DNA of 64,000 nucleotides from Ruditapes philippinarum. Its lineage: Eukaryota. A program made the position numbers and the translations under genes. The stretch covers positions 248,001-312,000 of the forward strand of contig NW_026859228.1 of assembly GCF_026571515.1 (NCBI RefSeq), given 5' to 3'. The notes under the pieces were generated by a model that was not told the origin of the DNA, did no database searches, and was given only the letters and a program-made list of their open reading frames with translations. This document shows positions 23,754-61,755 of this stretch, piece after piece (positions within the stretch are counted from its first letter, which is position 1; each line of letters starts with the position of its first letter).

Positions 23754-25484
23754 ATGGAGGTTCCTGGTAAATTAGGTCTAGGAGATCTCAATGATGATGA
23801 CTCGAAATTAATATGTCTTCCATGTGACAGTGATGGTTTGAAGGAACATGCTTATGGCTTCTGCCAGGACTGCCAGGAGCATCTATGTGAAACATGCTAC
23901 AAACATCATAGACGCGCTCGTCCATTTAAAAACCATGTACTCATTGACAAAGAATCAATGCCAAAGACCCGGGTTAATGCACCTACAAAATCTGAGGATA
24001 CGGCCGACTTTTGCACGAAACACCAAGATAAACCATTAGAATTCTATTGTAGGGATCACACATCTGTGGCTTGTTATGTGTGCGTTACATTAGAACATAA
24101 ACAGTGTAAGGTGGACTATATTCCTGATGTTTCTGAAAACCTGTCTGATGAGATGACAGATATATTAGAACAAATGGAAACATTGATAACAAAATGTAAA
24201 TCGAACGTAGAATATGTTAGCAAAGCTGCGCAAAATCTAGACCAGAGTCATGCTAAAGTTGTTGAAGATATCAAAGCCTTCAGGAAAGAAATAAATGAAT
24301 GTTTGGACAGAATGGAAACCCAGATATTTAAAGAAGCTGACACAATTTTAAAAAGTGCAAAATGTAAACAGGAAACCGTATTAAATGCTTGCTTAGAGAT
24401 ACGTGAAGAACTTGAATGTTCACATTCGTTGTTAAGATCATTACAAGAACAGAACAAGCAAAATAAGCTTTTTATGGAGATTAAAAACGTCGGAAAACGT
24501 CTACCGATACTGACAGATAAGGAAAAGAACGTTTTGCATGCAAATACAGCAAATGATTGTGTTCAATTTACCCGCAACACAAGCATTATAGATTTTCTTA
24601 GGACTGACAAAAATTATTGGACATTGTCAACATTTGTACATCCATGCCCAGATAGAGCAATAGATTTACAATATATAGATACAATAGACGTGAAAATGAA
24701 ATCAGAGAAAGAGAAAAGTAACATTACTGGTATGGTAATGATTGCTCCTACAAAAATTGTTGTTTCCGATAACACTAACAAAAATATAAAACTGATTGAC
24801 ATTGAGAAAAAAGTAGTTGTGGCAGAGGTAAAAATGTTTTCAGGTCCCTCAGATGTTATAACTCTTCCAGACAAAAAGCTTGCTGTAGCTTTTTTCAATG
24901 AAATGTTTGTTCAGATAATGTCTTATTCTGACGCGAAACTGTCATTAGATCAACGTATAGATGTAAAAGAAAAGTGCAACGGTGTAGCTTATAGTCAGGA
25001 TAAATTGGTTGTCTCTTACAATAAATCAAAGAAAATAATCATTTTGAATCTTCAAGGAGAAATTCTCAATGTTCTTGGTTCTCCTGCTATATTCTATGGG
25101 CCTATCAGAGTTTTGTTCAGCAAGGATGAAACGTTTATATATGTATCAGATACAGATGGGAGTCAAAATAGTAAGGTTTTGAAAATGGATTGGAAAGGAA
25201 ATATTAAAACCGTTTTTGAAGAACAAACGTATAAATTTCCTTACGGTCAACAACAATTAGAAGATGAGACTATACTAGTGTGCTACAGAGGCAGTAACAC
25301 TATTCTGAGACTGTCAAGCAGCTTTAAGAAATGCGATATTATTGGACTAGAGAGAGCAAATATTTATTTTCCAAAAGCTGTAACATACTGCGACAAAGAA
25401 CAAAAACTGTACGTAAGTTGTTCATTAGAGAAAGAAGACTGGCGGGCTGATATTGTGAAAGTATTCCATGTTAAATGGATATAA
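23754..25484 (+). CDS. RING-less TRIM-like protein, 576 aa (B-box1, B-box2, coiled coil, NHL-like beta-propeller); copy 2 (subtype B)
   Basis: Intact ORF. B-box1 pattern CLPC..FCQDCQEHLCETCYKHH..H; B-box2 pattern CTKH..LEFYCRDH..ACYVCVTLEHKQC; helical middle region; propeller-type repeats (ITGMVMI..VVSDNTNKNIK, GPIRV..IYVSD, FPYG, FPKAV). Splice acceptor ttttttcag just before the ATG. Confidence 0.93.
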   Translation: MEVPGKLGLGDLNDDDSKLICLPCDSDGLKEHAYGFCQDCQEHLCETCYKHHRRARPFKNHVLIDKESMPKTRVNAPTKSEDTADFCTKHQDKPLEFYCRDHTSVACYVCVTLEHKQCKVDYIPDVSENLSDEMTDILEQMETLITKCKSNVEYVSKAAQNLDQSHAKVVEDIKAFRKEINECLDRMETQIFKEADTILKSAKCKQETVLNACLEIREELECSHSLLRSLQEQNKQNKLFMEIKNVGKRLPILTDKEKNVLHANTANDCVQFTRNTSIIDFLRTDKNYWTLSTFVHPCPDRAIDLQYIDTIDVKMKSEKEKSNITGMVMIAPTKIVVSDNTNKNIKLIDIEKKVVVAEVKMFSGPSDVITLPDKKLAVAFFNEMFVQIMSYSDAKLSLDQRIDVKEKCNGVAYSQDKLVVSYNKSKKIIILNLQGEILNVLGSPAIFYGPIRVLFSKDETFIYVSDTDGSQNSKVLKMDWKGNIKTVFEEQTYKFPYGQQQLEDETILVCYRGSNTILRLSSSFKKCDIIGLERANIYFPKAVTYCDKEQKLYVSCSLEKEDWRADIVKVFHVKWI

Positions 25485-26771: not shown

Positions 26772-27361
26772 TATTATATTTCCACGGACAATATATCCAT
26801 TCTGCTTTCTCTAGTTTTCTTGTTAAAATAACTGTATGAAGACTCTTGTGACCTCAAATCTCAATGGCAACACCTTAAGCAGTTGAATCATTGAAGTTGC
26901 AACTGCTCTCTAGATGGGCTATGATGGGTGCTCAATCACACAAAAAAATGTCTTTTTGTCATCACATTTTTATGAAAACATAATCAATGTCCAAGAACAA
27001 CATAAAAGATATAAGTTTGATTCTTAATAAATTTTATTTCATAAATTATCATGAATATATATAATTGCCAACTTTTTCCATTCATAACTCCCTAGATAAA
27101 ATCACTTTTGAGACAACTGGACTCCAATTCAGTCATAAATTACATGCTTGTGTTACAATTATTTTTTTAAATAAATACATTGAAAATAAATAATATCACA
27201 GTTTTTCACTTTGTATTAATATGGTTATGCATTACATCTATGTTAAGTCTAAAACTTTTCATTGTTCATGTAGGACGACATAACTTCGTTTTGAAATTTA
27301 AAATGTTTGAAATATCACAGTCAGTTAAGATGATGAAGGTCTTTTAAAACGTCTTTAAGGG

Positions 27362-27457
27362 TTAAGGTTGAAGAGGTGGTCTATTGGTATCATTTCGAAT
27401 TATTTCATCAAATACAAACTCCATTTTATCTATAGCATCTCCCACTATTGCATATGT
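27362..27457 (-). CDS. MYCBPAP: MYCBPAP-like gene, terminal coding exon (cassette of unit 2): TYAIVGDAIDKMEFVFDEIIRNDTNRPPLQP*
   Basis: Polypyrimidine tract and AG acceptor at 27459-27458, phase 0, 96 nt to TAA. Joined to the preceding exon it reads EDPIIDRKYKEKIFAQTYAIVGDAIDKMEFVFDEI, which resembles the MYCBPAP C-terminal helix as I recall it (not database-checked). Confidence 0.65.
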   Translation of the reverse strand, partial: TYAIVGDAIDKMEFVFDEIIRNDTNRPPLQP

Positions 27458-28001
27458 CTGAAAAAAAAGAAAAATGAAAAACAAATAATTACATTTCATA
27501 TGCAATGTTAATCATTTATAAATGCTGTAATTATCAGTCAATGTGTAAATGGCCAGCTGAGCTCAAACAGGCAAGAGATTATCCATACAAAAATCTTAAC
27601 CTTTTTGTCTGACACAATTAGACTTTATAAATGTTGATGGTAAAATGCAGGTAAACAATACTTGTTTTGATACAAATCCGCTTCCAATATATATCATAAT
27701 CTACCTTTGAATTAATGAGCAGAACAAAACAAAATTGCAAGTTTTAAGCTAAATGTGAACATTTTAATGTTAACAAAATGTGTTGAGTTGCATTTTAATG
27801 TTAACAAAATGAGTCTGGTTGCATAATAAAATGCAAGTAAATGTAATTCCGATATAGGGAATAGCTTAAGTACTGAAAATTATCAAGCATTGTACAATTG
27901 GGCACCTGAGGTGTCTATCCACTAATAATGCTGGAAATTCGCCATATGAACTTTACAATATCTATGTGACATGAAACCAAAACAAACAAACTTGAAATTA
28001 C

Positions 28002-28196
28002 CTGTGCAAAGATTTTCTCCTTATATTTTCTGTCAATGATGGGATCTTCATGGGCCAGTGAAGTTTGCATCATACTGGTTGGTGAGCCCGTTCTTTCCCT
28101 GTCCCCTAAACTACCCGCAGTTTTACCACGGCTAGGTGGGCCTCTAGAGGCAGGAGTCGCACTTTGTTTACCAGACTTCATATCTACTTTTGTAGA
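28002..28196 (-). CDS. MYCBPAP: MYCBPAP-like penultimate exon (unit 2): STKVDMKSGKQ...KEKIFAQ
   Basis: 195 nt, open, bounded by ttttttttag and CAG|gtaatt, phase 0-0; conserved in four units. Confidence 0.7.
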
Positions 28197-28656
28197 CTAA
28201 AAAAAACGTATACAAAAAAATGTTGATATTTTTACTTAATAAGAAATTTTTGATAAAAACAGATACTTTTATCAGTTGTATGAGAAATATATTTTGATAA
28301 ATAGATGACATCAAAATCTGTCAACATGTTCTTCGGCCATTTTTGTAATAATATGATAATAGCATTGGACCGGAGCTTTCTTTTCAAAATAACATCAAAC
28401 TTTAGTTTTAAATTCATTCATTTGTGTAAATACAAGTAAAAAAAATAATCTTTAGAATCTTGGATTGAAAATGTTTAACCCTTAATTTTGGGAAACTGAA
28501 AGGAACAAGTTTTTGCCACCAGTATAAAGTCAAGCAATTATTCAAATTTTTACAGTCACACCAGGCTCAATACTGCTGGCTGATCAACCTAGAAATTTTA
28601 TATGAATATCCCAGAAATTGACAAAGAACAGTTCAAACAATGAATCATAATAATAC

Positions 28657-28772
28657 CTCTTTTGAAACTTTTCCTCCTTTGTCTTTATCTTTAGCTGGTG
28701 TAGGGGCTTTCTTATCAGGTGCTTTTGCGGCTCCTTTATCCCCTGTTCCACTCTTACGTCCTTTACCATCAC
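28657..28772 (-). CDS. MYCBPAP: MYCBPAP-like Lys/Gly-rich exon (unit 2): DGKGRKSGTGDKGAAKAPDKKAPTPAKDKDKGGKVSKE
   Basis: 116 nt, bounded by ttttgtag and GAG|gtatta, phase 1-0, compatible with the next exon. Confidence 0.65.
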
Positions 28773-30244
28773 CTACAAAATAAACAAATTATATTTCTTT
28801 AACAATCACGTATCATATGATTTTATTATTTCTTATACACATCAAAATAGTTCCATAAATCATATTCTTCTGCAAAATTCATAATCTAGTCAAATAACAG
28901 ATAAGGGTGATCAGTCTATGAAAACTAACACTTTCATTGGTCAATTTTTAAATATTTTCTAGAGTAACAACCAATCAGATTTTGAAGTTTTTGACTGGTT
29001 GCTAAATATCTGTTTTTCGTCTTACTTACAGTGACTTTCTATTCTCTCTATTTTTGTCTCTTCATTTAAATGCAAGAAAAAAATGAAAATGTTACACATT
29101 TACTAAATATAAAAAGAATAGATTCTCTTAATTATATGAATGTTTACATTATTTTTGACGACTTTGATAATGGAAAAAAATGTTTAAATATTTATTAACA
29201 AATGATCTTAAATGAGAAGGAATAAGTGAAATACTTAAAATATGAGAACAATATCATGGGATATAAATACTGCTCTAGCTATTATTATACAGGATCAAAA
29301 TAATAGAGTAAAATATGAATAATTGAATGATATGGAACAGGGGTTTTCTAATATACAAACATGTTAAGATCACTTTAAACAAAACACATGAACAAAATAA
29401 CATAATGTTAGCAAAGACAACTTCACATGTCTATAAATTGTTTGTCTTACCTTTTGAAAATAATTTTCGTTTTTAAAATCTTTGGTCTTGTATCAATAAA
29501 GTGCAGTTAAAGCAATATATAGAAAAAAAGAAAACTAGATGTTCGGCAGATTTATTTAGTAAATTTTTTTTAAAAGCCTTAGATATAAAAATGAGACTTG
29601 CACTAAGTTACTATAGATGCTGCAGTCAAAGTCAACCCTTCTTGCAAAAAAACAGCCATACTTGATTTTGAAATGGTTATTTGAAGACAAATTTCTTCGA
29701 AATAAAATATACGGTACATGTATACATGTGGTAATGAAAACTTCAACATTAAACCAACAAACACAGGGCGAACAAGGTATATTGGATAGGTTGCAGTAAA
29801 ACTTACTACTCCCGGTACTTTATCTGACAATCCTTGCCCAACTGTAAAAACCCAACAAACACAAAACATTCAAAGCTTTCAGGGGAAGCAACTGAGACTA
29901 AGTAACAATGCAAAAGGGAGACTACTTCTAGTTAACGACCTAAATGTTTGTAATGCAATAAAATACAAATAAATGTAGAATGATATGTACTGCTTTGTTT
30001 TTAAAATAATTTAGAAATAGCAAAGAAAAAACTTTGATCAAACATGATGTTTTTACTTAAGCATTTATCAAGAGTTAGTGACCTTGCTATTTTAATGAGG
30101 TTCTGGGTTATGATGGTTCTTTGGTAAAAAGTAAGTAAAGTAAGATGCTATTTGAAATGTAATTACTCATATGAGTACAGACAGATTTTATTCCCTTGTT
30201 TCACTTTTAGTTAATGACCTATTTAATGACTATAATTAAACAAA

Positions 30245-30700
30245 CAAGAGCTGTCGGTAGGACAGCAACGCTCGACTAGTCTTAGTGCTTGATAGTAAAA
30301 GAGCCTTGATAATGTAAAATTTTCTGAGTTTATAACAAAAGGACAGAATTTTTCTTTAAAATCCATGTTACAGTTATAGGCCATAGAGAGAGTATTATAT
30401 TATGCTCTCAAAAAAGAGTATAAAATTTCAAACTTGTTTCAATAGAATATGAAAATATCTGAGGTGGTATGCAAACCTAAATGAAAATTCTAAGTTGAAA
30501 AAGGGGCATAATTCTGTCAACAGGTTGGGATCAAGATGGTGAACAAGTGTGCAAAGTTTCAAAGCCATATGTCAATACACTTTAAAAATATTTGAGGTAT
30601 TAGAAAAACTTTAACATGAAGTGGTTACGCCGACACCGACGCCGATGCTCGGGTGACTACAATAGCTCTACTTATTCTTATCAAATAGTCGAGCTAAAAA
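30245..30700. mobile_element. Non-autonomous Helentron/HINE-like mollusc repeat (second copy at 41025-41462)
   Basis: Begins aacaagagctgtc; subterminal inverted motif GCTCGACTA/TAGTCGAGC; (gacgcc)n microrepeat; inserted in an A-run; empty site at about 860-875. Confidence 0.65.
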
Positions 30701-31143
30701 TTGTTGTAAGGATATGAAGAAATGATGGATAAATTATGATAAATAATGAATTATTATAAATAATGCTATAATCCTGTGTAAATAATGAGTATTATTTGCA
30801 AACTAGAATAATATGCTGTGTAAATGCTGCTATTACAAAGAAAAATGCAAGTGTATAGACACAACGATACGTTTGTCATGACATAGTTACAGAAATGAGA
30901 TATATTTATAATTTCCTATTCCTGGCATAGTATGAAGAATAATATACATAGCTAGTGTTGGACATACGCCTCCAATCCATCAATAATAATAGACATGATC
31001 ACAACTTCACAAGGGTAAAAGACATGAAAATAACAATACATTTTGTGTAACCCATACACCAACCAAGTCACTTCAAACTAGCAACGTTTCTGCACACTTT
31101 GTGTGTTTGTGTGCAAATGTGTCTGATCTACACATTGGCTTAC

Positions 31144-31239
31144 TCAATGTTCTATCTTCAGATAGTAATTTAGGGTTACTAGGGGGTTTGGAAGGGGTTC
31201 TAGATGCCCGTCTACTCTCACGAGATTCCTGTTTTGATT
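31144..31239 (-). CDS. Upstream 96-nt symmetric exon of the same - strand gene (unit 2): SKQESRESRRASRTPSKPPSNPKLLSEDRTL
   Basis: Bounded by ttctgttag and gtaagc, phase 1-1, open. Homologues of the same length at 1280-1375 (TAG), 18186-18281 (open) and 41907-42002 (TAG). Confidence 0.55.
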   Translation of the reverse strand, partial: NQNRNLVRVDGHLEPLPNPLVTLNYYLKIEH

Positions 31240-32630
31240 CTAACAGAAAAAATAATGTACCAAATATTAAAAAGTAATCAAAGCTAAATAAGATTCTTAA
31301 TCAATGAAGCATTCTTAAAATATAGTTGACATTCATGATATAAAGTGATGTTCTAATGCTCAAAATGACATTCAAATACACAACAGTACATGTACACTGT
31401 TTGTGTTTCTTTTCTTTTTAGAAAGTCAAAAAGTCAAATCTTTTAAAAGTTCGTTGCCTGCAAAAAATAATCTTTGCGTATGAAAATATTTAGTTTCTAG
31501 ATGTATTACTTTGTACTATTTTAAATAAATCCCTCACCTAGTAGTGAGAATGTATTATGCCGAAAAGTAAAGAAAGAAAGCACTGCTATATCTACACAGA
31601 TATCAGAGATTGAGTTAAAAGGTCTTATACACTGAATAATCACAAATATTTCAAGCAGCATGCAACATAATGAATGCAACAGGCATCATGTGAATGTTCT
31701 GTTTCCAGACAAAGCAGGAGGAAATATTTTAATGTCTTGTACAATTAACGATTTCATGCTAGACACAAATGAGGTTGTTCTTTCTAAACTTAACAACAAC
31801 AAAAAAAACATAAAACAACAAAAAACTTATCTTTATTGCTAACATTCTAATGTAAGATGATAATCTTATATAATTGTGTAAATGAGCAAGTTATCTTCTC
31901 ATAATGGTAAAAGTTTCGGTATTTATTCACTATACTTTCACAAAATAGCATTTGATCCAAATGAACTTTGGGAAAAAATAATAACAGATCGTTTCATTTC
32001 TTACCAACTGTGATCAGAGGAAGCGTAAAGTTTTTTTCTATAAAACAACACAACACATTTGTTTATTATGTAACATTTTTAAATACATGTTGTTTTATAT
32101 TCCATTTTTATATGTACAATGTTGTGTACAATGTTTACAAATATGTGAATGGCTAGCATATAAACTACTGTAATTTGTCCATTCATTTGACTTGACTCTA
32201 AAGATCCGAATAATTTCTAAAGTTGCTCTTGAGAAACAATATATCAAAATTGCAATTCAAACTAATACTGGGCATTTGACACATATTTGTTTACAGTTGC
32301 TCTAAAAAGTGAGCAGTTACATTTAAGAAAACTGATTGGGCAAAACAATAAATTCATTACCAGTATATAAGGTTTATTACTGTCAACAGCAGACAAACGG
32401 ATTCTTGTCTGTAACAAAGGAAGTGGCGATATCCTAAGACTGTTAGGCAGCTTAAAACATATGACATTTTTGGACCAACGAGAGCAAATATTATAACCTT
32501 TGAGCATACTGTGATAGAGAATATAAATTTTCGCTATTTGCTCAATGGAAAAAGAAATATAATAGGCTAATATTTTCTAAATATCAGTGTGAACTTAACT
32601 AGAATGATACATAGGGATATGTCGTAATTA

Positions 32631-33315
32631 AACAAGATATGTTTGTAAAACATGTATGCCCCCTATCAGCAGCCAATAAGTCATGTGATAAGGTTATTAT
32701 GCATGACATCTGACCCAGTGATCAAACAATTAATAAGGGTTATCAAGTATCTACTGGTCATGACCTTAACCTTGACCCCTTGACCCAAAACTCAATAGGG
32801 GTCATTTGCTGGTCATGGCCAATCATCATACAAAGTTTGAAGTTCCTAGGCCTAAGCGTTTTTAGTTAATTGATCGGAAACCATTTTTACCTACAAGCTC
32901 AATGTGACCTTGACCTTTGACCCCTTGACCCCAAAATCAATAGGTCATCTGCTGGTCATGACCAATCACCATGCCAAGTTTGAAGTTCCTAGGCCGAAGC
33001 GTTCTTTAGTTATTGATCAGAAACCGTTTTTACTTACAATGTCAATGTGACCTTGTCCTTTGACCCCTTGATCCCAAAACTCAATAGGGGTAATCTGCTG
33101 GTCATGACCAATCACCATACCAAGTTTGAAGTTCCTAGGCCTAAGCGTTCTTAAGTTATTGATCAGAAACCGTTTTTACTTACAAGGTCAATGTGACCTT
33201 GACCTTTGACCCCTTGACCCAAAACTCAATAGGGGTCATCTGCTGGTCACGACCAATCATCATACAAATTTTGAAGTTCCTAGGCCTAAGCGTTTTTAGT
33301 TAATTGATCGGAAAT
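32631..33315. repeat. Truncated HINE-like element carrying about 4 tandem 145-bp satellite monomers
   Basis: gttcctagg recurs with spacings 143, 146 and 145 bp; tgaccttgacctttgacc motif typical of molluscan satellite-bearing elements; absent from the paralogs at about 19570 and 54085. Confidence 0.85.
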
Positions 33316-33735
33316 TCAAACAAGTAACGTGACAATGAATATTTTACTTACGTACACTGATAATCTTATCAGGTGACTAAATATTTACCAAACGACCAGA
33401 GGGTAAACAAGATTTCTACCTTTATTTTTATTTTCTTGTATAAAAAATACATTCTGCTTTATGTAACACTAGCATACGCCTTTAATTGAAATACAAGTAG
33501 AAAAACTAACATATAAAGTTTTAGAATTAAAGTATAAATTTATAATATTTTACTTATCAGGTCAAATATTTTTAAAAGGGTATTTCTGAAAATATGCCAG
33601 TAATTTGATTGCCCGTCAGAAATTGATACTAGTGTTTTAAATGTAAATGGATCGGTCGAATTCCATGTATTTAACATCATAATTGATAAGATTTTGAAAA
33701 AAAATTCTTCACATATCATATTTTTTCAGACAGGA

Positions 33736-35434
33736 ATGGAGGTTCCTGGTAAATTAGGTCTAGGAGATCTAAATGATGATGACTCGACATTAATATGTCT
33801 TCCATGTGATATTGATGGTTTGAAGGAACCTGCTTATGGCTTCTGTCAGGACTGCCAGGAGCATCTATGTGAAACGTGCTACAAACATCATAGACGTGCA
33901 CGTCCATTTAAAAACCATGTACTCATTGACAAAGAACCCATGCCAAAGACCAGGGTAAATGCAGCAACAACATCTGAGGATACAGCCGACTATTGCACGA
34001 AACACCAAGACAAACCACTAGAATTTTATTGTAGGGATCACACATCTGTGGCTTGTTATGTGTGCGTTACATTAGAACACAAACAGTGTAAGGTGGACTA
34101 TATTCCTGATGTTTCTGGAAACCTGTCTAACGAGATGACAGATATATTAGAACAAATGCAAGTATTGAAGCAAAGCTTCACAAGAACTAGACCAGAGTCA
34201 TGCCAAAGTTGTTGAAGATATCAAAGTCTTTAGGAAAGAGATAAATGAATGTTTGGACAGAATGGAAACCAGAATATTAAAGGAAGCTGACACAATTGTA
34301 AAAGAAGCAAAGGGTAAACAGGAAACCATAAAAGCTGCTTCTTTAGAGATAACTGAAGAACTTGAATGTTCACATTCATTGTTAAGATCATTAAAAGAAC
34401 AGAACAAGCAAACTAAGCTTTTTATCGAGATTAAAAACGTCAGAAAAAGTCTGCCAATACTGACAGATAAGGAAAAGAACGTATTGCGTGCAAATACAAC
34501 AAACAAATATATTCAATTTACCCGCAACACAAGCATTATAGATTTTCTTAAGACTGATAATAATTATGGAACATTGTCAACATTTGTACAGCCGTGCCCA
34601 GATAGTGTAGTAGATTTACAATATATAGATACAATAGACATGAAACAGACATCAGAAAATGAAAAATGTAACATTACTGGAATAATAATGATTGCTCCTA
34701 CGAAAATGGTTGTTTCTGAAAGCAGTAACAGAAATATAAAACTGATCGACGTTGAGAAAAATGTAGTTGTAACAGAGGTAAAGATGTGTTCACGTCCGTT
34801 GGATGTTATAACTCTTCCAGAAAAAAAACTTGCTGTAACTTTGGCCGATGAAATGTTTCTTCAGATATTGTCTTATTCTGACGCGAAACTTTCATTAGAT
34901 CAACGTATAGATGTAGGAGAAAAGTGCGCTGGTGTTGCTTATGGCCAGAATAAATTGGTTATCTCTAGTCGGGCTTCAAAGAAAATAATCATAATGAATC
35001 TTAAAGGAGAAATTCTCAATGTTCTTGGTTCTCTTGCTATATTCTATGGGCCTATTAGAGTTTTGATAGGCAAGGATGAAACGTTTATATATGTATCGGA
35101 TACAGATTGGAGTCAAAGTAGTAAGGTTTTGAAAATGGATTGGAAAGGAAATGTTAAAAGCGTTTTTGAAGACCAAAGTCACAAATTTCCGTACGGTCAA
35201 CAACAATTAGAAGATAAGACTATACTGGTATGTTACAGTGAAAGTAACACTATTCTGAGACTGTCAAGCAGCTTAAAGAAATGTGATATTATTGGGCTAG
35301 AGAAAGCAAATATTTATTTTCCAAAAGCTGTAACATACTGCGACAGAGAACAAAAACTGTGCGTAAGTTGTTCATCAGAGAAAGATGACTGGCGGGCTGA
35401 TATTGTGAAAGTGTTCCATGTTAAATGGAAATAA
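33736..35434 (+). pseudogene. TRIM-like gene copy 3 (subtype B), frameshifted and lacking the putative first exon
   Basis: A 60-nt segment of copy 2 is replaced by 28 nt at about 34159-34186 (net -32 nt), splitting the gene into ORFs 33736-34215 and 34253-35434. About 3 kb of upstream sequence, including the conserved donor site, is deleted. Confidence 0.85.
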
Positions 35435-35739
35435 ATATTACAAAGGAATATGTCGTCATCAAAAAAGTCTCTTTATATAACTGACATTGTCTTTTCTTCG
35501 TAAACTGATACGTGATGGATAAAAGATGAGTGTTCATACAGTAAGACCTTGCAGGACCAGATTATCTTAAGTAGGGAACAATAGCTTTCATGCATCAATT
35601 TGGCGAGTCACAGAGCAATGAGATTATTACTTGGCTCGGGACAGTTCTGATTCAACACAATCTGTATAAGGTGAAATAGGGTAGAATCATTTTTGATGGA
35701 AAACTTTTTGTAAACATTTAAGTTGTTGTTTAAATTATG

Positions 35740-35939
35740 GTTTGGTTTAAACATATTTATTTACGCTCGATTGCGAAACAAGCTCTTGCAACTTATATTA
35801 ATCACTTTCGAATCCGCTTCCTGGAACAAACCATTACTGGCGTCATATGAAGAAACATGGTCGTGACCCGAGTAGGGCTCGAACCCATGATCTCTGGGTT
35901 GAGAGGCAGACACTCTAACCACTAGGCCACCGCTCCCCC
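35740..35939 (-). mobile_element. tRNA-derived SINE, same insertion duplicated with the unit
   Basis: Same A/B boxes, TSD and position about 300 bp after the TRIM stop. Confidence 0.9.
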
Positions 35940-36105
35940 TTAAATTATGATGATTATAGAGTAAATAAATGTATATTTGCACAGGCTGTGGATAAAGGAA
36001 ATACTAGATGTAGAAATTGGTATCTTATTGAATAGTTAAATTCGTTAAGACTAAACATGAACTCTCAATAACCGTTTTTACGCAAGGAATTAGTACAATT
36101 TACTG

Positions 36106-36429
36106 ATGTTTTATTGGAATGCCATACAGCTGACTGATGTGAATGGATGTCGCCTTAATAAGCTTGGGATATATAGAACTTTCAAACATTTTTATGCTGT
36201 TGAACACTATTGCAAAATTATTTTTTTCCATTTTCGTCATATATCTCCCTTCTCTAAGTTTAGTTGCGGTGAGGCACAAATTAGGCCAGACATTGGGAGA
36301 TATAAAAAATCATCTTCCAGAAACATAAAAGCATGTCAGTTGTGTGATAATTGTGTTGAATCAGAGCTGATCCACGTTGTGCTAAAATGCTTAATGTGTG
36401 TTAGGGAGAGTCAAATAACGTTTCATTAA
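36106..36429 (+). mobile_element. 3' fragment of a LINE (post-RT C-terminal zinc motif); homologues at 51589-51900 and about 14270-14500
   Basis: KLGIYRTFK...SKFSCG..IRPDIGRY...CQLC.NCVESE.IHVVLKC matches the EtGRy..CxxC..EdE.H....C tail of invertebrate LINE ORF2. Confidence 0.7.
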
Positions 36430-38105
36430 CCTGTAATGTCAACTGTAATTTTAATGTGTTAAATGTTTTAGAAAAAAATAAAAATTTTGATATGGTTAGA
36501 AAAACACCTGTTGTAATACATGTATGTTAAAAAACAAGAAACAATGCTCTATACAATTTGTTTTCTTAATGTTTTGAATTTTGTATATATGTTGAACTTT
36601 ACATTATACAGTGTAAGTTTTTAGCTATTACTAAATGTTTTAATTTTGTATAAAGTCTGAACTCTTATCAGCCGTTAAGTTTTTACTATGTCAGAAATGC
36701 CAATTTGTTTGCTACTAGTCCTAAGTAATGATACATATTTTATGGTGCTTATTACCCTATTGCATCTAGTGATTTTATTTTTTTTTTCCAAATCAATTCC
36801 AATTTTATCTTTTCATTCATTTTTATTTTAATTAACTTATAAGTAAATACTGTAAATATAATGAAGTGGCTCTCTAAAACTAGCAAGGCATTTTTACCTT
36901 TATTGTGAGGATTATGTGTAGGAATGTGAAAGTCGGGACATAATACTTAATTATATTATTAGTCTCTAACAATCTACCCTACAATGGCTTTGAGCATACA
37001 TGTATATAAATTTTATGTATTAATGTGATGAATTGTATTATGAAGAGACTTGAATAAAAGATAAATAATTAAATGTTTAATGACCAAGCTTATGTCTTTT
37101 TGTTATCATGTTTAGTGGTGAAATGCTCTCGAATATCGAGTCTCTCATTGACATATACAAACCATGATCATGATAGTCACATTTGACTTGAAGTTTTCTC
37201 TTACATTTTTCTCCACTTTGTGTCTATAATCTGAACAGTGCTCTGGTTTGAACAGTGCTGATGTATTCTTTTCCCCACGGACAATATATCCCTTAAAAGA
37301 GACGTCTGCATTCTTTAGTTTTCTTGGTAAAATAACTGTATGAAGGCTCTTGTGACCTCGAATCTCAAGGCAACACTTTAAGCAGTTAAATCATTCAAGT
37401 TCCAACAGCTCTCTAGATGGGCTATGATGGGTGGTCATTGCAAGGTTCCTTTCCATCAGATGTGATATTAAATACATGTGAACGCGGTCTGTCACACTAT
37501 AAATAAGGTACGCTGGACAACATTAAGCTTACTTGAAATGACTGTTATAATGTTTTTCATCTTCAAAGGACACAAATGCTGTAAAACAAAATTTAAATAT
37601 TCCAGCATTAAGTAAATGTTAAAAATCAGCTTTCTATCACAAACAAAAACATTTTAATTATTTTGTTTACCTCTGTTGGTTAAGATACAATGCTTCACAA
37701 AAAAGTCTTTTTGTCATCACATTTTGCTGAATCAAGAACAACATAAAAAATAAAAGTTTGATTGTTAATAAATTTTATTTCATAAATCATCATGATAATA
37801 TATAATTGCCAATTGTTTCCAATAATAACTCCATGGATAATATCATATTCAAGACAACTGGACTCGAGTCCAGTCATAAATTACATGCTTGTGTTACAAT
37901 TATTTTTTTTAATAAGTACATTGAAAATAAATAATATCACAGTTTTTCACTTTGTATTAATATGGTTATGCATTACATCTATGTTAAGTCTATAACTTTT
38001 CATTGTTCATGTAGGACGACATGACTTCGTCTTGAAATTTAAAATGTTTGAAGTTTCACAGTATTGAGTAAAGATGATGAAGGTCTTTTAAAACCGCTTT
38101 AAGGG

Positions 38106-38201
38106 TTAAGGTTGAAGAGGTGGTCTATTGGTATCATTTCGAATTATTTCATCAAACACAAACTCCATTTTGTCTATAGCATCTCCCACTATTGCATATG
38201 T
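38106..38201 (-). CDS. MYCBPAP: MYCBPAP-like terminal coding exon (cassette of unit 3)
   Basis: Same peptide as 27362-27457 with 2 synonymous differences; acceptor intact. Confidence 0.65.
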   Translation of the reverse strand, partial: TYAIVGDAIDKMEFVFDEIIRNDTNRPPLQP

Positions 38202-38763
38202 CTAAAAAAGATAAAAAAAAATTATTACATTTCATATACAATGTTTTATCATTTACAAATCTTGTAATTATCAGTCAATGTGTAAATAATCAGCTGAGCT
38301 CATACAGGCAAGAGCTAGATTATCCATACAAAAATCTTAATATTTTTGTTTGACACAATTAGACTGTATAAATGTTGATGGTTAAATGCAGGTAAACAAT
38401 ACTTGTTTTGATACAAATCCTCTTCCAATATACATTGTATATTATAATCTACCTTTGACTTATTAAAAAGGCAGAACAAAACAAAGTTGCAAGTTTTAAG
38501 CTAAATGTCAACATTTTAATGTTAACAAAAACTGTCTGGTTGCATAATCAAAGGCAAGTAAATGTTATTCCTATATCGTGAACAGCTTAAGTACTGAAAA
38601 TTACCAAGCGTACAGATGGTAGGTGGTTTTACTAAGGCAATTACACCTGCCTTGTACAATTGGGCACCTGAGGTGTCTATCCACTAATAATGCTGGAAAT
38701 TTGCCATATGAACTTTACAATAACTATGTGACATGAAACCAAAACAAACAATCTTCAAATTAC

Positions 38764-38958
38764 CTGTGCAAAGATTTTCTCCTTATATTTTCTGTCAATG
38801 ATGGGATCTTCATGTGCCAGTGAAGTTTGCATCATACTGGTTGGTGAGCCCGTTCTTTCCCTGTCCCCTAAACTACCCGCAGTTTTACCACGGCTAGGTG
38901 GGCCTCTAGAGGCAGGAGTCGCACTTTGTTTACCTGATTTCATATCTACTTTTGTAGA
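38764..38958 (-). CDS. MYCBPAP: MYCBPAP-like penultimate exon (unit 3)
   Basis: 195 nt; same peptide as 28002-28196 with 3 synonymous differences; AG and GT intact. Confidence 0.7.
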
Positions 38959-39431
38959 CTGAAAAGAATGTAAACAAAAAAAATGTTGATCTTTTTACTT
39001 AGTAAGAAATTTTTGAAAAAACAGATACTTTATGAGAAATATACTTTGATTAATAGATGACATCAAAATCTGTCAACATGTACTTCGGCCTTTATTTTCT
39101 GTAATAATATGATAACAGCAGTGGACGGGGGCTTTTTTTCAAAATGATATCAAACTTTAGTTTTTAATTCATTCATTTGTGTAAATACAAGTAAAAGAAT
39201 AATCTTTAGAATCTTGGATAGTAAAGTTGTAATCCTTATACTGCTAAAACTGAAAGGAACAAGTTTTTGCCACCAGTATAAAGTCAAGCAGTCACTCTAG
39301 GCTCTATACTACTGGCTGATCAACTGTGAAATTTTCCTGAATATCCCCAAAAATTGACAAATGACAGTTCAAACAATGAAAAGAAGGACAAGTCATTTCT
39401 GTAGGAAATGCAGTATGCTTAATGTTAATAC

Positions 39432-39547
39432 CTCTTTTGAAACTTTTCCCCCTTTGTCTTTATCTTTAGCTGGTGTAGGGGCTTTCTTATCAGGCGCTTT
39501 AGCGGCTCCTTTATCACCTGTTCCACTCTTACGTCCTTTACCATCAC
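39432..39547 (-). CDS. MYCBPAP: MYCBPAP-like Lys/Gly-rich exon (unit 3)
   Basis: 116 nt; same peptide as 28657-28772 with 4 synonymous differences; AG and GT intact. Confidence 0.65.
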
Positions 39548-40589: not shown

Positions 40590-40625
40590 TACTTCCAGGT
40601 ACTTTATCTGACAATCCTTGCCTAA
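40590..40625 (-). CDS. Candidate 36-nt microexon (RQGLSDKVPGS) of the - strand gene
   Basis: Bounded by tttttacag and gtaagt, phase 1-1. The paralog at 29807-29841 is 35 nt. Confidence 0.45.
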
Positions 40626-43600
40626 CTGTAAAAACCAACAACACAAAACATTCAAAGCTTTCAGGGGAAGCAACTGAGACTAAGTAACAATGCAAAAGGG
40701 AGACTACTTCTAGTTAACGACCTAAATGTTTGTAATGCAATAAAACACAAATAAATGTAGAATGATATGTACTGCTTTGTTTTTAAAATAATTTGGAAAT
40801 AGCAAAGAAAAAACTTTGATCAAACATGATGTTTTTACTTAAGCATTTATCAAGAGTTAGTGACCTTGCTATTTTAATAAGGTTCTGGGTTATGATGGCT
40901 CTGTGGTAAAAAGTAAGTAAAGTAAGATGATATTTGAAATGTAATTACTCATATGAGTACAGACAGATTTTATTCCCTTGTTTCACTTTGAGTTAATGAC
41001 CTATTAAATGACTATAATCAAACAAACAAGAGCTGTCGTTAGGACTATTCTTAGTGCTTGATAGTAAAAAAAGCCTTGATAATGTAAAATTTTCTGAGTT
41101 TATAACAAAAGGACAAATTATTCTTTAAATCCATGTTAGGGTTATATGCCATAGAGAGAGTATTATATTATGCTCTCTTAGAAGAGTATAAAATTTCAAC
41201 TTGTTTCAATAGAATATGAAAATATCTGAGGTGGTATGCAAACCTAAATGAAAACCTAGTTGAAAAAGGGGCAAAATTCTGTCTACAGGTTGGGATCATG
41301 ATGGTGAACAAGTGTGCAAAGTTTCAAAGCCATATGTCAATACACTTTAAAAATATTTGAGGTATTAGAAAAACTTTAACACAAGTGGTTACGCCGACAC
41401 CGACGCCGATGCTCGGGTAACTACAATAGCTCTACTTATTCTTATCAAATAGTTGAGCTAAAAATTGTTGTAAGGATATGAAGAAATGATGGATAAATTA
41501 TGATAAATAATGAATTATTATAAATAATGCTTTAATCCTGTATAAATAATGAGTATCATTTGCAAACTAGAATAATATGCTGTGTAAATGCTGCTATTAC
41601 AAAGAAAAATGCAAGTGTATAGACACAACGATACGTTTGTCATTACATAGTTACAGAAATGAGATATATTTATAATTTCCTATTCCTGGCATAGTATGAA
41701 GAGTAATATACATAGCTAGTGTTGGACATACGCCTCAATCCATCAATAATAACAGACATGACCACAACTTCACAAGGGTAAAAGGCATTTAAATAACAAT
41801 ACATTTTGTGTAACCCATACACCAACCAAGTCACTTCAAACTAGCAACGTTTCTGCACACTATGTGTGTTTGTGTGCAAATGTGTCTGACCTACACATTG
41901 ACTTACTCAATGTACTATCTTCTGATAGTAATTTAGGGTTACTAGGGGGTTTTGAAGGGGTTCTAGATGCCCGTCTGCTCTAACGAGATTCCTGTTTTGA
42001 TTCTAACAGAAACAATAATGTACCAAAATATTAAAAAATAATCAAAGCTAAATCAATGAAAAATTCTTAAAATATAGTTGAAATTCATGCTTTTTAAATT
42101 TGATATAAAGTTATGTTCTAATGATAAAAATGACATTCAAATACACAACAGTACATGTTCAGTGTTTTTGTTTCTTTACTTTTTAAAAAGTCAAAAAGTC
42201 AAATCTGTTAAAAGTTCGTTGCCTGAAAAAAATATATTATTTGCATATGAAAAAATTTCTAGATATATAACTTTGTATTATTTTAAATAAATCTCTCAAC
42301 TAGTAGTGAGACATTTATGTATTATGACGAAAAGAGAGAAAGCACTGCTGTATCTACACAGATATCAGAGATTTAGGTAAAATGTTTCCAACACTGAATA
42401 ATCACAATTATTTCAAGCAGCGTGCAACATAATGAATGCAACAGGCATCATGCAAATGTTCTGTTTCCAGACAAAGCAGGAGGAAACATTTTAAAATCTT
42501 GTACAATAAACGTTTTCATGCTAGACACAAATGAGTTTGTTCTTTACAAAACTTTAACAACAAAAAAAAAACAAATAAACATAAAACAACAAGAAACGTA
42601 TCTTTATTGCCAACATTCTAAAGTAAGATGATAATTTTATATAATTGTGTAAATGAGCAAGTTATCTTCATATAAGTATAGTTCAATTTTTTTTGCTTTC
42701 TTTCAGCAGAATTATTAAAGTTTCGGAACTTATCCAGTTTGTTCCAAATAAACTTTAGGGGAAACATTTTAGTAACAGATCTTTTAAAAAAACTATGATC
42801 AGAGGAAACGTAAAGTTGTTTTTTCTATAGAACAAAAACAACACATTTGTTTATTATGTAACATTCCTAAATGCATGCTCGTATTATATATTTATATATT
42901 TAATATGTACAATGCTGTGTACAATGTTTACAAATATGTGAATATATGTAATAGCTATACTGTCATTTACCATACATTTCACATGACTTTAAAGATCCCA
43001 ACAATTTCTAAAGTTGCTCTTGCGAAACTATATATCAAAATTGCTATTCAAACCAAGACTAATCGTTTAACACGTATTTGTTTACAGTTGCTCTTTAAAC
43101 TGGTCAGATGCACATATGATTCAACAAAGAAAAGTTATGAAAACTTATTTGGATACAAATGTTAAATCCATTTTTTTGAAGTTTATTACTATCTACAGTA
43201 GATAAAAGGATTCTGGTGTGTAACAAAGAAAGTGACTATCTCCCGACACTGTTGAGCAGCTTAAAAGACGTATCATTTAGGACCAGAGACAGCAAATACG
43301 TTTTATCCTTAAGCATACTGCGATAGAGAACATGAACTGTACGCTAGTTGTTGAATAGAAAAGGAAATATTGAAAACTGACATTTTAAATATCAATGTGA
43401 AATGAACTTAAATGATAGACAGGCATGTTTGGCCATTAAACTTTTTTGTCATCTAAGATTAATATAGTGAAACTATACACATAAAATAAGACCATTCACA
43501 CGATATGACGTTGTAGCAACAATAAAAGTCTTCAAACAAATTTTCTATGAAGTTGTATTACTAGAGATTTTGCTGTTATCAAGAAATCTTGCGGAAGTAG

Positions 43601-60915: not shown

Positions 60916-61755
60916 TTAAGGTTGAAGAGTTGGTCCATTGGTGTCATTTCGAATTATTTCATCAAATACAAACTCCATTTTGTCTATAGCATCTCCCACT
61001 ATTGCATATGTCTGAAAAAAAAGAAAAATGAAAAACAAATAATTACATTCCATATATACAATGTTAATCATTTACAAATGTTGTAGTTATCAGTCAATGT
61101 GTAAATGATCAGCTGAGCTCATACAGGCAAGAGATTATCCATACAAAAATCTTAACCTTTTTGTCTGACACAATTAGACTGTATAAATGTTGATGTTTAA
61201 ATGCAGGTAAACAATACTTGTTTTGATACAAATCTTCTTCATATATATATCATAATCTACCTTTAACTTAATGAGCAAAACAAAACAAAGTTGCTAGTTT
61301 AAAGCTAAATGTGAACATTTTAATGTTAACAAAATGTGTCTGGTTGCATAATAAAATGCAAGTAAATGTAATTCCTATATCAGGAAGCTGAAGTACTGAA
61401 CATAATCGAGCCTACAGATTGTAGGTGGTTTTACGTAGACACCTAGTACGCTTGACTTGTACATCTGGACACCTGAGATGTCTAGCCACTAATAAAGTTG
61501 GAAATTTGCTATAAGGCCATATGATCTGTGTCACCTAAACCAAAAGAAACTTAAAATTACCTGTGCAAAGATTTTCTCCTTATATTTTCTGTCAATGATG
61601 GGATCTTCATGGGCCAGTGAAGTTTGCATCATACTGGTTGGTGAGCCCGTTCTTTCCCTATCCCCTAAACTACCCGCAGTTTTACCACTGCTAGGTCGGC
61701 CTCTAGATGCAGGAGTCGCACTTTGTTTATCATACTTCATATCTACTTTTGTAGA
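60916..61755 (-). pseudogene. Truncated MYCBPAP-like exon cassette (unit 5)
   Basis: Exons 60916-61011 and 61561-61755 are open but carry several nonsynonymous changes (MKYDKQ, GRPSSG). Upstream exons are removed by a deletion near 62125. Confidence 0.7.

What the first reader, a model, noticed from the sequence alone, without database searches (positions are those of the whole stretch)
27362..39547. Two duplicated 3' exon cassettes of a hidden antisense gene differ by 9 synonymous and 0 nonsynonymous changes
Seen: three phase-compatible exons on the - strand (116 + 195 + 96 nt) occur in unit 2 (27362-28772) and unit 3 (38106-39547). By manual comparison they differ at 4 + 3 + 2 sites, all silent, with all splice sites intact, while their introns carry many substitutions and indels. 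The same cassette in units 1 and 5 is decayed. Inference: both cassettes were under purifying selection for most of their divergence. They may be redundant alternative last-exon sets of one gene (same protein, different 3' UTR) interleaved with the TRIM genes. Alternatives are two alleles joined by unequal crossover, or an uncollapsed haplotype.
Basis: partly seen in the sequence, partly recalled or inferred. Interest (0 to 1): 0.8.

Follow-up and report, generated by a model that had tools for sequence, protein, structure and literature searches.

The report
Duplicated end-exons of clam MYCBPAP gene
The two "hidden" exon sets are tandem copies of the last three coding exons of the Manila clam's ciliary MYCBPAP/FAP147 gene, copied along with neighbouring TRIM-NHL genes. 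Selection still preserves them, so they look like interchangeable working gene ends, not dead fragments.

Summary
On the minus strand, exons of 116, 195 and 96 nt occur at 28772-28657, 28196-28002 and 27457-27362, and again at 39547-39432, 38958-38764 and 38201-38106. They differ at 4+3+2 sites, all at third codon positions and all silent. Synonymous divergence is 0.10, the same as the introns (0.085-0.14). Nonsynonymous divergence is 0 of 312 sites (P about 1e-6).

The gene is not unknown. RefSeq for Ruditapes philippinarum annotates it as LOC132755708 and LOC132755695, both "uncharacterized". I identify it as the C-terminal end of the MYCBPAP/FAP147 orthologue, a protein of the C2a projection in the ciliary central apparatus.

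Its upstream exons are single-copy on this contig and lie about 47-60 kb upstream of the two cassettes, at the contig end. The contig holds seven cassette copies. Four are intact (14 silent changes against 1 replacement) and three are decayed.

RNA contigs confirm the splice junctions. One animal expresses a unit-2-type cassette and another a c7/unit-3-type cassette. RefSeq isoforms come in four pairs with identical proteins.

The rivals are unit-internal promoters and cassette swapping by unequal crossover. Interest is moderate.

The parts
28657..28772 (-). Unit 2 exon A (116 nt, starts in phase 1; encodes DGKGRK...KVSKE)
   Evidence: Spliced to exon B in run X1 (joint 28196|28657, depth 264, 0 differences from unit 2).
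28002..28196 (-). Unit 2 exon B (195 nt, 65 codons; holds the conserved AHEDPxxDxKYKEK motif)
   Evidence: Joint 27457|28002 in runs X1 and X3. Exon-only homologues at 63-78% identity on other sequence-database contigs whose source organisms are not given.
27362..27457 (-). Unit 2 exon C (96 nt, 31 codons plus TAA)
27020..27361 (-). Unit 2 3' UTR, with AATAAA beginning at 27038 on the minus strand
   Evidence: RNA contigs cover 27130-27443. Poly(A) signal found. Homology with unit 3 ends near 26940-26990.
39432..39547 (-). Unit 3 exon A (4 silent differences from unit 2)
38764..38958 (-). Unit 3 exon B (3 silent differences from unit 2)
38106..38201 (-). Unit 3 exon C (2 silent differences from unit 2)
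31144..31239 (-). Unit 2 copy of alternative exon Y (96 nt, phase 1-1, open frame). It is used in RefSeq LOC132755695.
   Evidence: P0019 contains its translation. The c7 copy of Y is in RefSeq isoforms X1/X2 (P0020). RNA depth here is only about 9.
41907..42002 (-). Unit 3 copy of exon Y, carrying an in-frame TAG
29807..29841 (-). Unit 2 copy of alternative micro-exon Z. It is 35 nt instead of 36, which shifts the frame if the exon is included. This may be an assembly indel.
   Evidence: The 36-nt form is joined to exon A in run X3 (joint 28772|about 29807, depth 106).
40590..40625 (-). Unit 3 copy of micro-exon Z (36 nt, open frame)
31610..31745 (-). Locus-specific conserved block. It contains ATTTGCAT and the ATG (MPVAF...) that RefSeq uses as the first exon of LOC132755695. 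I treat it as a candidate internal promoter or first exon.
   Evidence: Alignment A1. Eight copies, all in this locus. P0019 N-terminus. No RNA was laid here in the four runs.
16202..17331 (-). Unit 1 cassette, decayed: stop and frameshift in exon A, 52-nt deletion in exon B, stop codon lost in exon C
60916..61755 (-). Unit 5 cassette, decayed: exon A absent, six replacement differences in exons B and C
23754..25484 (+). Intact single-exon TRIM-like gene of unit 2 (576 aa), convergent with the unit 2 cassette. The unit 3 counterpart (33694-35434) is split by a frameshift.

Best explanation
The cassettes are tandem copies of the last three coding exons, stop codon and 3' UTR/poly(A) signal of the Manila clam (Ruditapes philippinarum) orthologue of MYCBPAP/FAP147. 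In mouse and Chlamydomonas this protein belongs to the C2a projection of the ciliary and sperm central apparatus.

The ancestral gene end lay tail-to-tail with a single-exon TRIM-like gene. Repeated tandem duplication of [TRIM + gene end] produced at least seven cassette copies on this contig.

The upstream coding exons on this contig exist once only, upstream of the whole array. The MYCBPAP domain exons lie on a second contig, whose first 15 kb is about 4% diverged from the end of this one.

Four cassettes (c0, unit 2, unit 3 and the proximal c7) are kept intact by purifying selection. The most likely reason is that they still act as working, interchangeable 3' ends. The phase-1 donors of the single-copy upstream exons would splice to exon A of one cassette or another, giving the same protein with a different 3' UTR.

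Shown here: the exon structure, splicing of A-B-C, the selection signal, the single-copy upstream exons, and expression of different cassette types in different animals. Inferred: long-range splicing to the distal cassettes (units 2 and 3), and the identity of the two cassettes behind the RefSeq isoform pairs.
For: Selection:
- Unit 2 against unit 3 gives 9 synonymous and 0 nonsynonymous differences, with pS 0.10 equal to intron divergence of 0.085-0.142.
- Across the four intact copies there are 14 silent changes and 1 replacement (P about 9e-9).
- Decayed copies show silent:replacement ratios of 3:12 and 4:6.

Gene identity:
- RefSeq proteins of LOC132755708 and LOC132755695 lie on a 337378-bp contig, the same length as C7715.
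- P0020 residues 6-208 align to residues 743-918 of the 932-aa MYCBPAP chain 9ijj_v (E=0.001), with conserved blocks at both ends.
- PF14646 (MYCBPAP) exons lie in colinear order upstream of a second copy of exons 1-3/Y/Z/C on C15316.
- Function comes from PMC13345628 and PMC12297659.

Single-copy upstream exons.

Splicing: joints 27457|28002, 28196|28657 and 28772|Z, all GT..AG on the minus strand, are seen in RNA contigs.

Use of distal cassettes:
- Run X1 has a single unbranched exon A+B unitig that is identical to unit 2 in exon A. Unit 2 exon A differs at 4-5 sites from every other intact copy.
- The same run has unit-2-type intron just upstream of exon A, yet depth of only 0-30 over Y, Z and the block exon against about 264 over exon A.
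- Run X3 carries c7/unit-3-type variants.
- Eight RefSeq isoforms form four pairs with identical sequence.
- Unit 3 cannot start translation on its own, because of the TAG in Y.
Against: - No read, contig or annotation table that I could inspect joins an upstream exon to exon A of unit 2 or unit 3.
- The meaning of the RefSeq 'identical pairs' is inferred from naming practice recalled from memory. It could also arise from multi-mapped junction reads, since the first 28 nt of exon A are identical in all copies.
- RefSeq models unit 2 as a separate gene with its own first exon.
- A proximal cassette with its own poly(A) signal should out-compete distal ones, yet run X1 shows only a unit-2-type exon A. 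That fits a structural haplotype in which a unit-2-type cassette is proximal better than it fits alternative splicing.
- SNP-based copy assignment across individuals is weak. The 3' UTR in X1 matches no reference copy exactly.
- Continuity between C15316 and C7715 is inferred.
Confidence: 0.55

Rival explanations
1. Each intact cassette belongs to an independent short gene. It would be driven by the conserved block that was duplicated with it (an internal promoter of the ancestral gene) and would make a stand-alone MYCBPAP C-terminal fragment of about 190 aa, as in RefSeq LOC132755695.
For: P0019 (LOC132755695) starts MPVAF in the block, reads through an extended unit-2 Y exon and continues into A-B-C. 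The block is locus-specific and present in every unit. Unit 2 Y is open.
Against: The MPVAF reading frame is open only in unit 2. The c7 copy reaches a stop soon after the block, unit 3 has a 1-nt shift plus a TAG in Y, and c0 has a TAA in Y. This cannot explain selection on unit 3 or c0. The modelled N-terminus (FDYFLIFGTLFFLLE) translates a polypyrimidine tract. In runs X1 and X3 the block has depth 0 and Y about 9-22, against 217-264 for exons A and B. No in-frame ATG exists in Z, Y or exon A.
Confidence: 0.15
2. Only the cassette nearest the gene body is used in any one chromosome. Frequent unequal crossover and gene conversion between cassettes reshuffle which type sits there. Each cassette lineage is therefore regularly exposed to selection as the working end in some haplotypes.
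For: Nearest-neighbour relations are mosaic, with c7 as the hub. Upstream of exon A, unit 3 is closest to c7 (3%). In intron A-B, unit 2 is closest to c7 (6%). In intron B-C, c0 is closest to c7 (4.7%). In the 3' UTR, unit 2 is closest to c7 (2.5%). Run X1 expresses only a unit-2-type exon A and run X3 only c7/unit-3-type flanks, as if different animals had different proximal cassettes. No public run holds more than 27% of the sampled words of the unit 2 stretch, which suggests strong structural or sequence polymorphism.
Against: Cassette lineages have stayed distinct to dS 0.06-0.13, with intron divergence to match. That implies long independent histories, not constant homogenisation. Distal copies that were never exposed should decay, as units 1 and 5 and c1 did. 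The RefSeq identical-protein pairs come from a single assembly. This explanation is not exclusive of the best one.
Confidence: 0.2
3. Assembly artefact: units 2 and 3 are two haplotypes, or mis-joined reads, of one real unit, so the two cassettes are alleles.
For: The assembly has unpolished, homopolymer-noisy patches (C15316 4300-5200; a c7 intron). Contig ends overlap without being merged. Bivalve genomes are highly heterozygous.
Against: Units 2 and 3 differ by 8-14% in introns with many indels. Their TRIM genes are 80-92% identical in protein, with one intact and one frameshifted. They sit in a ten-unit array with seven cassette copies of graded decay. The unit-2-specific intron and exon A are reproduced almost exactly in an independent run. 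Alleles would still need purifying selection to explain 9:0.
Confidence: 0.05

Closest known systems
MYCBPAP / FAP147 (Pfam PF14646; C2a projection of the ciliary central apparatus; PDB 9IJJ chain v)
   Same: The RefSeq protein built from these exons aligns to the last 190 or so residues of mouse MYCBPAP. Conserved blocks occur at both ends: QKP..LY..QL..ID..V.QS..R..GLP.K, and DP...KY.....A..YA. PF14646 exons lie directly upstream, in order and on the same strand, on contig C15316.
   Different: RefSeq does not name it MYCBPAP, because the contig break cuts the gene. In this clam the terminal exons are present in at least seven copies, four of them intact. I know of no such arrangement reported for MYCBPAP, though I ran no dedicated literature search for one.
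Alternative last exons and tandemly duplicated exon clusters (mutually exclusive cassettes such as those of Dscam1 or myosin heavy chain; this comparison is from my own knowledge, not a tool result)
   Same: Phase-compatible duplicated exon sets lie downstream of shared single-copy exons. Each set has an acceptor, a stop codon and a poly(A) signal.
   Different: The cassettes encode identical protein, so they add no protein diversity. They lie 10-125 kb apart and are interleaved with opposite-strand TRIM genes. They arose as passengers of a neighbouring gene's amplification. Use of the distal sets is not yet shown.
Partial gene duplicates or unprocessed pseudogene fragments in segmental duplications
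   Same: The origin is the same: a gene's 3' end copied together with a neighbouring gene. Three of the seven copies (c1, unit 1, unit 5) behave exactly like such fragments.
   Different: Four copies show dN/dS near 0 over dS of about 0.06-0.13, which a dead fragment would not.
RefSeq models LOC132755708 (isoforms X1-X8) and LOC132755695 of Ruditapes philippinarum
   Same: They use these very exons. The translations of exons A, B and C are identical to residues in P0015, P0017, P0018, P0019 and P0020.
   Different: They are annotated as 'uncharacterized', and the 'start' lies 242 bp from the contig end. The duplication, the selection signal and the MYCBPAP identity are not part of the annotation.

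Membership tests
MYCBPAP/FAP147 orthologue (3' end) | Sequence similarity of the encoded C-terminus to the MYCBPAP C-terminal region | tested here: met
   phmmer of P0020 against PDB: 9ijj_v MYCBPAP, E=0.001, query 6-208 against chain 743-918 of 932. The domain i-Evalue is 0.13, so the match is modest on its own.
MYCBPAP/FAP147 orthologue (3' end) | PF14646 domain exons upstream on the same strand of the same gene | tested here: inconclusive
   PF14646 positions 25-421 are found in colinear order on C15316 (27.6 kb down to 16.4 kb, minus strand). They lie directly upstream of a copy of exons 1-3, Y, Z and C that is about 4% diverged from the end of C7715. On C7715 itself the contig ends 242 bp upstream of exon 1, so linkage to the window's array is inferred.
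MYCBPAP/FAP147 orthologue (3' end) | A transcript running from PF14646 exons into exons A-C | not testable with these tools
Alternative terminal-exon cassettes of one gene | Shared upstream exons are single-copy and lie upstream of all cassettes | tested here: met
   tblastn of P0015, P0017 and P0020 finds exons 1, 2, the 30-nt alternative exon and exon 3 only at C7715 334.6-337.1 kb. An own-genome search finds exon 2 only there and on C15316.
Alternative terminal-exon cassettes of one gene | Each cassette has an intact acceptor, phase compatibility, a stop codon and a poly(A) signal | tested here: met
   Exon 2, exon 3, Y and Z all end in phase 1, and exon A starts in phase 1.
Alternative terminal-exon cassettes of one gene | Transcripts join the shared upstream exons to more than one cassette | tested here: inconclusive
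   The support is indirect. RefSeq has four pairs of identical proteins under different isoform names. In run X1 a unit-2-type exon A has depth 264, with no matching depth on any upstream exon inside unit 2. No junction was seen directly.
Independent tandem paralogue genes | Each copy has its own promoter, start codon and complete ORF | tested here: not met
   Unit 3 has a TAG in Y and no copy of exons 1-3. c0 has a TAA in Y and lacks Z. Only unit 2 has an open frame from a local ATG, and that frame is not conserved in other units.
Pseudogenised duplicate fragments | Relaxed constraint (dN/dS near 1) and disabling mutations | tested here: not met
   Not met for units 2 and 3, c0 and c7: 14 silent changes against 1 replacement, with no indels. 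Met for c1, unit 1 and unit 5.
Haplotig or assembly duplication | Half read depth and no spanning long reads | not tested
The indirect evidence is against this reading.

The most novel reading that the evidence does not exclude
One ciliary structural gene (MYCBPAP) routinely ends in any of up to four synonymous terminal cassettes spread over about 125 kb. Its primary transcripts would then run antisense through several TRIM-NHL genes. This would link expression of a cilia/sperm gene to transcriptional interference with, or co-regulation of, a candidate immune-receptor array, and that link would keep the redundant cassettes under selection.
Probability: 0.12. Interest if true: 0.7.

Novelty: new variant of a known kind. 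Interest (0 to 1): 0.42.

Why it matters
Dead-on-arrival partial duplicates are the normal fate of gene ends caught in a neighbour's tandem amplification. Here four copies of a terminal exon set stay protein-identical across about 10% neutral divergence. Either redundant terminal cassettes are really used, or unequal crossover keeps cycling them into use. Both cases give a clean natural system for asking how selection acts on redundant gene ends.

There is also a practical point. Two "uncharacterized" RefSeq loci turn out to be the 3' end of a conserved cilia/sperm-motility gene that the annotation splits at a contig break. Anyone annotating the clam's TRIM-NHL arrays should expect these interleaved exons on the opposite strand.

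Tried and rejected
- Pfam on single exons found nothing.
- An HMMER search of 1.84 billion representatives, and a word-indexed search with exon B, found only unspliced exon-plus-intron ORFs. The RefSeq proteins surfaced only through a cluster-member look-up.
- I first tried to find a start codon inside the unit: an upstream extension of Y, the conserved block, and the region before exon A. No ORF was conserved between units, so I rejected a self-contained gene for unit 3 and c0.
- I considered that exon conservation was due to gene conversion from the functional c7 copy alone. I rejected this because exon synonymous divergence equals intron divergence while replacements are absent. About 15-20 replacements would be expected on a neutral unit 3 lineage.
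- I first read the C15316 cassette as biologically decayed in exons A and B. Inspection showed homopolymer-inflated, unpolished sequence, so I treat it as assembly noise.
- Assigning expressed transcripts to reference copies by SNPs in exon C and the 3' UTR failed. The allele in run X1 matches no reference copy.
Full-length searches used only RefSeq proteins returned by the tools.
- The search of earlier findings gave nothing near this place.


Full report
**1. The observation**

The window is an AT-rich tandem array (about 30% GC) with units of roughly 9-15 kb. Each unit carries a single-exon TRIM-like ORF on the plus strand.

- Unit 2: exon A 28772-28657 (116 nt), exon B 28196-28002 (195 nt), exon C 27457-27362 (96 nt, ending in TAA).
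- Unit 3: 39547-39432, 38958-38764 and 38201-38106.

The first 2 nt of exon A complete a codon. The two translations are identical. The 4+3+2 differences are all at third codon positions and all synonymous. All acceptors and donors are canonical.

By Nei-Gojobori, S=89.7, N=312.3, sd=9 and nd=0, giving pS=0.100. The probability that 9 of 9 changes are silent under neutrality is about 1.4e-6.

Substitution divergence in the two cassette introns is 8.1% and 12.6%, and in the 3' flank 8.6%, with many indels. Synonymous sites have therefore diverged like neutral DNA while replacement sites have not moved at all.

One caveat: divergence along the unit is mosaic. The non-exonic 2 kb upstream (29171-31270) is only 3-4% diverged.

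**2. Splicing is real**

I laid two sets of transcriptome-like contigs (X1, X3) and two raw RNA-seq runs (X21, X23) on 27000-32700.
- Both contig runs show the joint 27457|28002.
- X1 shows 28196|28657 as a 311-nt contig that is exactly exon A plus exon B.
- X3 shows exon A joined to an upstream 36-nt micro-exon, which I call Z (29841-29807 in unit 2).
- All skipped segments are CT..AC on the plus strand, that is GT..AG on the minus strand.
- Exon depth is 170-350 against 0-30 in introns, so these runs do contain spliced RNA.
- The two raw runs had too few reads here to add anything.

**3. The array is larger than the window**

The window is C7715:248001-312000 of a 1.4-Gb assembly. Exon B occurs seven times in the genome, all on this contig. 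I fetched 188-337 kb of the contig and mapped every exon.
- Intact cassettes: c0 (204.9-207.6 kb, one E-to-K replacement), unit 2, unit 3, and c7 (326.9-328.4 kb).
- Decayed cassettes: c1, unit 1 and unit 5. These show frameshifts, a 52-nt deletion, a lost exon A, a lost stop codon and many replacements.
- Among the four intact copies there are at least 14 silent changes and 1 replacement (P about 9e-9).
- The decayed copies show silent:replacement ratios of 3:12 and 4:6 against unit 2.
- Ten TRIM copies alternate with the cassettes, convergent with them.

**4. What the gene is**

Single exons hit no Pfam family. In the large protein libraries they hit only unspliced exon-plus-intron ORFs from other database contigs whose source organisms the tools did not give, at 63-78% identity. 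These share the conserved motif AHEDPxxDxKYKEKxxAQ.

A cluster look-up then showed that one such ORF clusters with RefSeq proteins of Ruditapes philippinarum, encoded on a contig of exactly 337378 bp, the length of C7715. The RefSeq models are:
- LOC132755708 isoforms X1/X2 (220 aa), X3/X4 (205 aa), X5/X6 (198 aa) and X7/X8 (188 aa).
- LOC132755695 (188 aa).

So the gene is annotated, not hidden, although it is labelled "uncharacterized".

Mapping those proteins back to the contig places the exons as follows:
- Exon 1 (MSFIPQKP...) at 337136-337083.
- Exon 2 at 336384-336277.
- Two alternative phase-1/1 exons at about 335.17 kb and 334.6 kb.
- The c7 copy of a 96-nt exon I had predicted (Y; 31239-31144 in unit 2).
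- Then exons A, B and C.

The 220-aa protein aligns to residues 743-918 of the 932-aa MYCBP-associated protein in the mouse sperm central-apparatus structure 9IJJ. The E-value is 0.001, with recognisable blocks at both ends.

Independently, exons matching Pfam PF14646 (MYCBPAP) lie in colinear order on contig C15316 (27.6 kb down to 16.4 kb, minus strand). They sit immediately upstream of a second copy of exons 1-3, Y, Z and C.

The first 15 kb of C15316 parallels C7715 322-337 kb, with about 4% substitutions. It is either the other haplotype or an unmerged overlap. Its exon A and B region is homopolymer-noisy, unpolished sequence, not biological decay.

I conclude that the exons are the 3' end of the clam MYCBPAP/FAP147 orthologue. 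RefSeq truncates the gene because C7715 ends 242 bp upstream of "exon 1". In mouse and Chlamydomonas, MYCBPAP/FAP147 is a component of the C2a projection of the ciliary central apparatus (PMC13345628, PMC12297659).

**5. How the duplicated cassettes can be under selection**

The duplication unit includes:
- a locus-specific conserved block (31610-31745 in unit 2; eight copies, all in this locus);
- the alternative exons Y and Z;
- exons A to C;
- the 3' UTR with AATAAA;
- the convergent TRIM gene.

On this contig the upstream coding exons are not duplicated.

In the distal units the alternative exons are damaged while A to C are perfect:
- Unit 3 Y has an in-frame TAG.
- c0 Y has a TAA, and c0 lacks Z.
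- Unit 2 Z is 35 nt instead of 36, which may be an assembly indel.

No in-frame ATG exists in Z, Y or exon A. The only local start is the one RefSeq uses for LOC132755695, MPVAF... in the block, read through a polypyrimidine tract into Y. That frame is open only in unit 2.

Selection on unit 3 and c0 therefore cannot come from self-contained genes. It also cannot come from passive gene conversion by c7. Exon synonymous divergence equals intron divergence, yet none of the 15-20 replacements expected on a neutral lineage are present.

That leaves use of the distal cassettes together with the single-copy upstream exons.

Evidence for this:
- All upstream donors are phase 1, matching exon A.
- The RefSeq isoforms form four pairs with identical proteins but different isoform names. 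By NCBI naming practice, which I recall from memory and did not check, this implies different CDS coordinates with the same translation. In this locus only duplicate cassettes can give that result.
- In run X1 the only exon A present is identical to the unit 2 sequence, which differs at 4-5 sites from every other intact copy. It comes with unit-2-type intron just upstream, at depth about 264. Y, Z and the block exon within unit 2 have depth 0-30. Its partner exon must therefore lie outside the unit.
- Run X3, from another study, carries c7/unit-3-type variants instead.

Evidence against, or open points:
- I saw no junction directly.
- Multi-mapping could create the RefSeq pairs, because the first 28 nt of exon A are identical in all copies.
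- A single cassette type per animal fits a structural polymorphism at least as well. Unequal crossover would put different cassette types next to the gene body in different haplotypes.
- The mosaic nearest-neighbour pattern, with c7 as the hub, shows that such exchanges have happened.
- The 3' UTR in X1 matches no reference copy exactly.
- No public run holds more than 27% of the sampled words of the unit 2 stretch.

**6. Verdict**

- Purifying selection on both cassettes, and on two more outside the window, is firmly supported.
- The gene is already annotated. I identify it as the MYCBPAP 3' end.
- A cassette-swapping haplotype model (about 0.2) and unit-internal promoters (about 0.15) are live rivals and not mutually exclusive. 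An assembly artefact is unlikely (about 0.05) but was not tested by depth.
- This is a new variant of known phenomena (partial gene duplication and alternative last exons). Interest is moderate.

**7. Limits**

Full-length queries were RefSeq proteins returned by the tools.

Noticed in passing
window 31610-31745 (copies at 42372-42507, 18658-18779 and 1752-1887; also C7715 332831-332975 and C15316 7461-7600): A 136-nt block with a near-invariant core containing the octamer ATTTGCAT. It occurs eight times in the genome and only in this locus. RefSeq places the first exon and ATG of LOC132755695 here, but no RNA was laid on it in four runs.
   Followed up: partly
window 28934-28978, minus strand, about 170 nt upstream of exon A: Two CCAAT-type boxes (CTGATTGGTT and GACCAATGA) about 35 bp apart, with a TATTTAAAA between them. 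They are conserved in units 2 and 3, c7 and c0. This may be an intronic promoter or enhancer.
   Followed up: no
window 30240-30700 and 32630-32700: Repeat segments with very high RNA depth (tens of thousands in contig runs, hundreds of reads in the raw runs) and many internal rearranged joints. They look like a highly expressed interspersed repeat sitting in the gene's intron.
   Followed up: no
L024 (C15316) 4300-5200; L015 about 6700-6900 (c7 intron): Patches of homopolymer-inflated, apparently unpolished consensus in the assembly. These can mimic pseudogenisation: exons A and B of the C15316 cassette look 'decayed' only because of this noise.
   Followed up: partly
window 32761-33314: A tandem repeat of about 143 bp (88-95% identity between copies), just upstream of the unit 3 TRIM gene.
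   Followed up: no
window 12374-14105, 23754-25484, 33694-35434, 49032-50489 and 57982-59712 (plus strand): Five TRIM-like single-exon genes. Only units 2 and 5 are intact (576 aa). Units 1 and 3 are frameshifted and unit 4 is truncated. TRIM integrity and cassette integrity are uncoupled: unit 3 has a broken TRIM and an intact cassette, while unit 5 has an intact TRIM and a decayed cassette.
   Followed up: partly
proteins P0003 and P0011-P0014 (ENA contigs of 0.3-3.3 Mb): Five exon B ORFs in one 90%-identity cluster share an identical or near-identical exon but have different intron read-through tails, on five different large contigs of unstated origin. This could mean multiple cassette copies in another genome, or several assemblies of one locus.
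   Followed up: no
G000:C377:77404-77604 (+): A further single-exon match to PF14646 (30.9 bits) on another contig. It may be a second MYCBPAP fragment or a paralogue.
   Followed up: no
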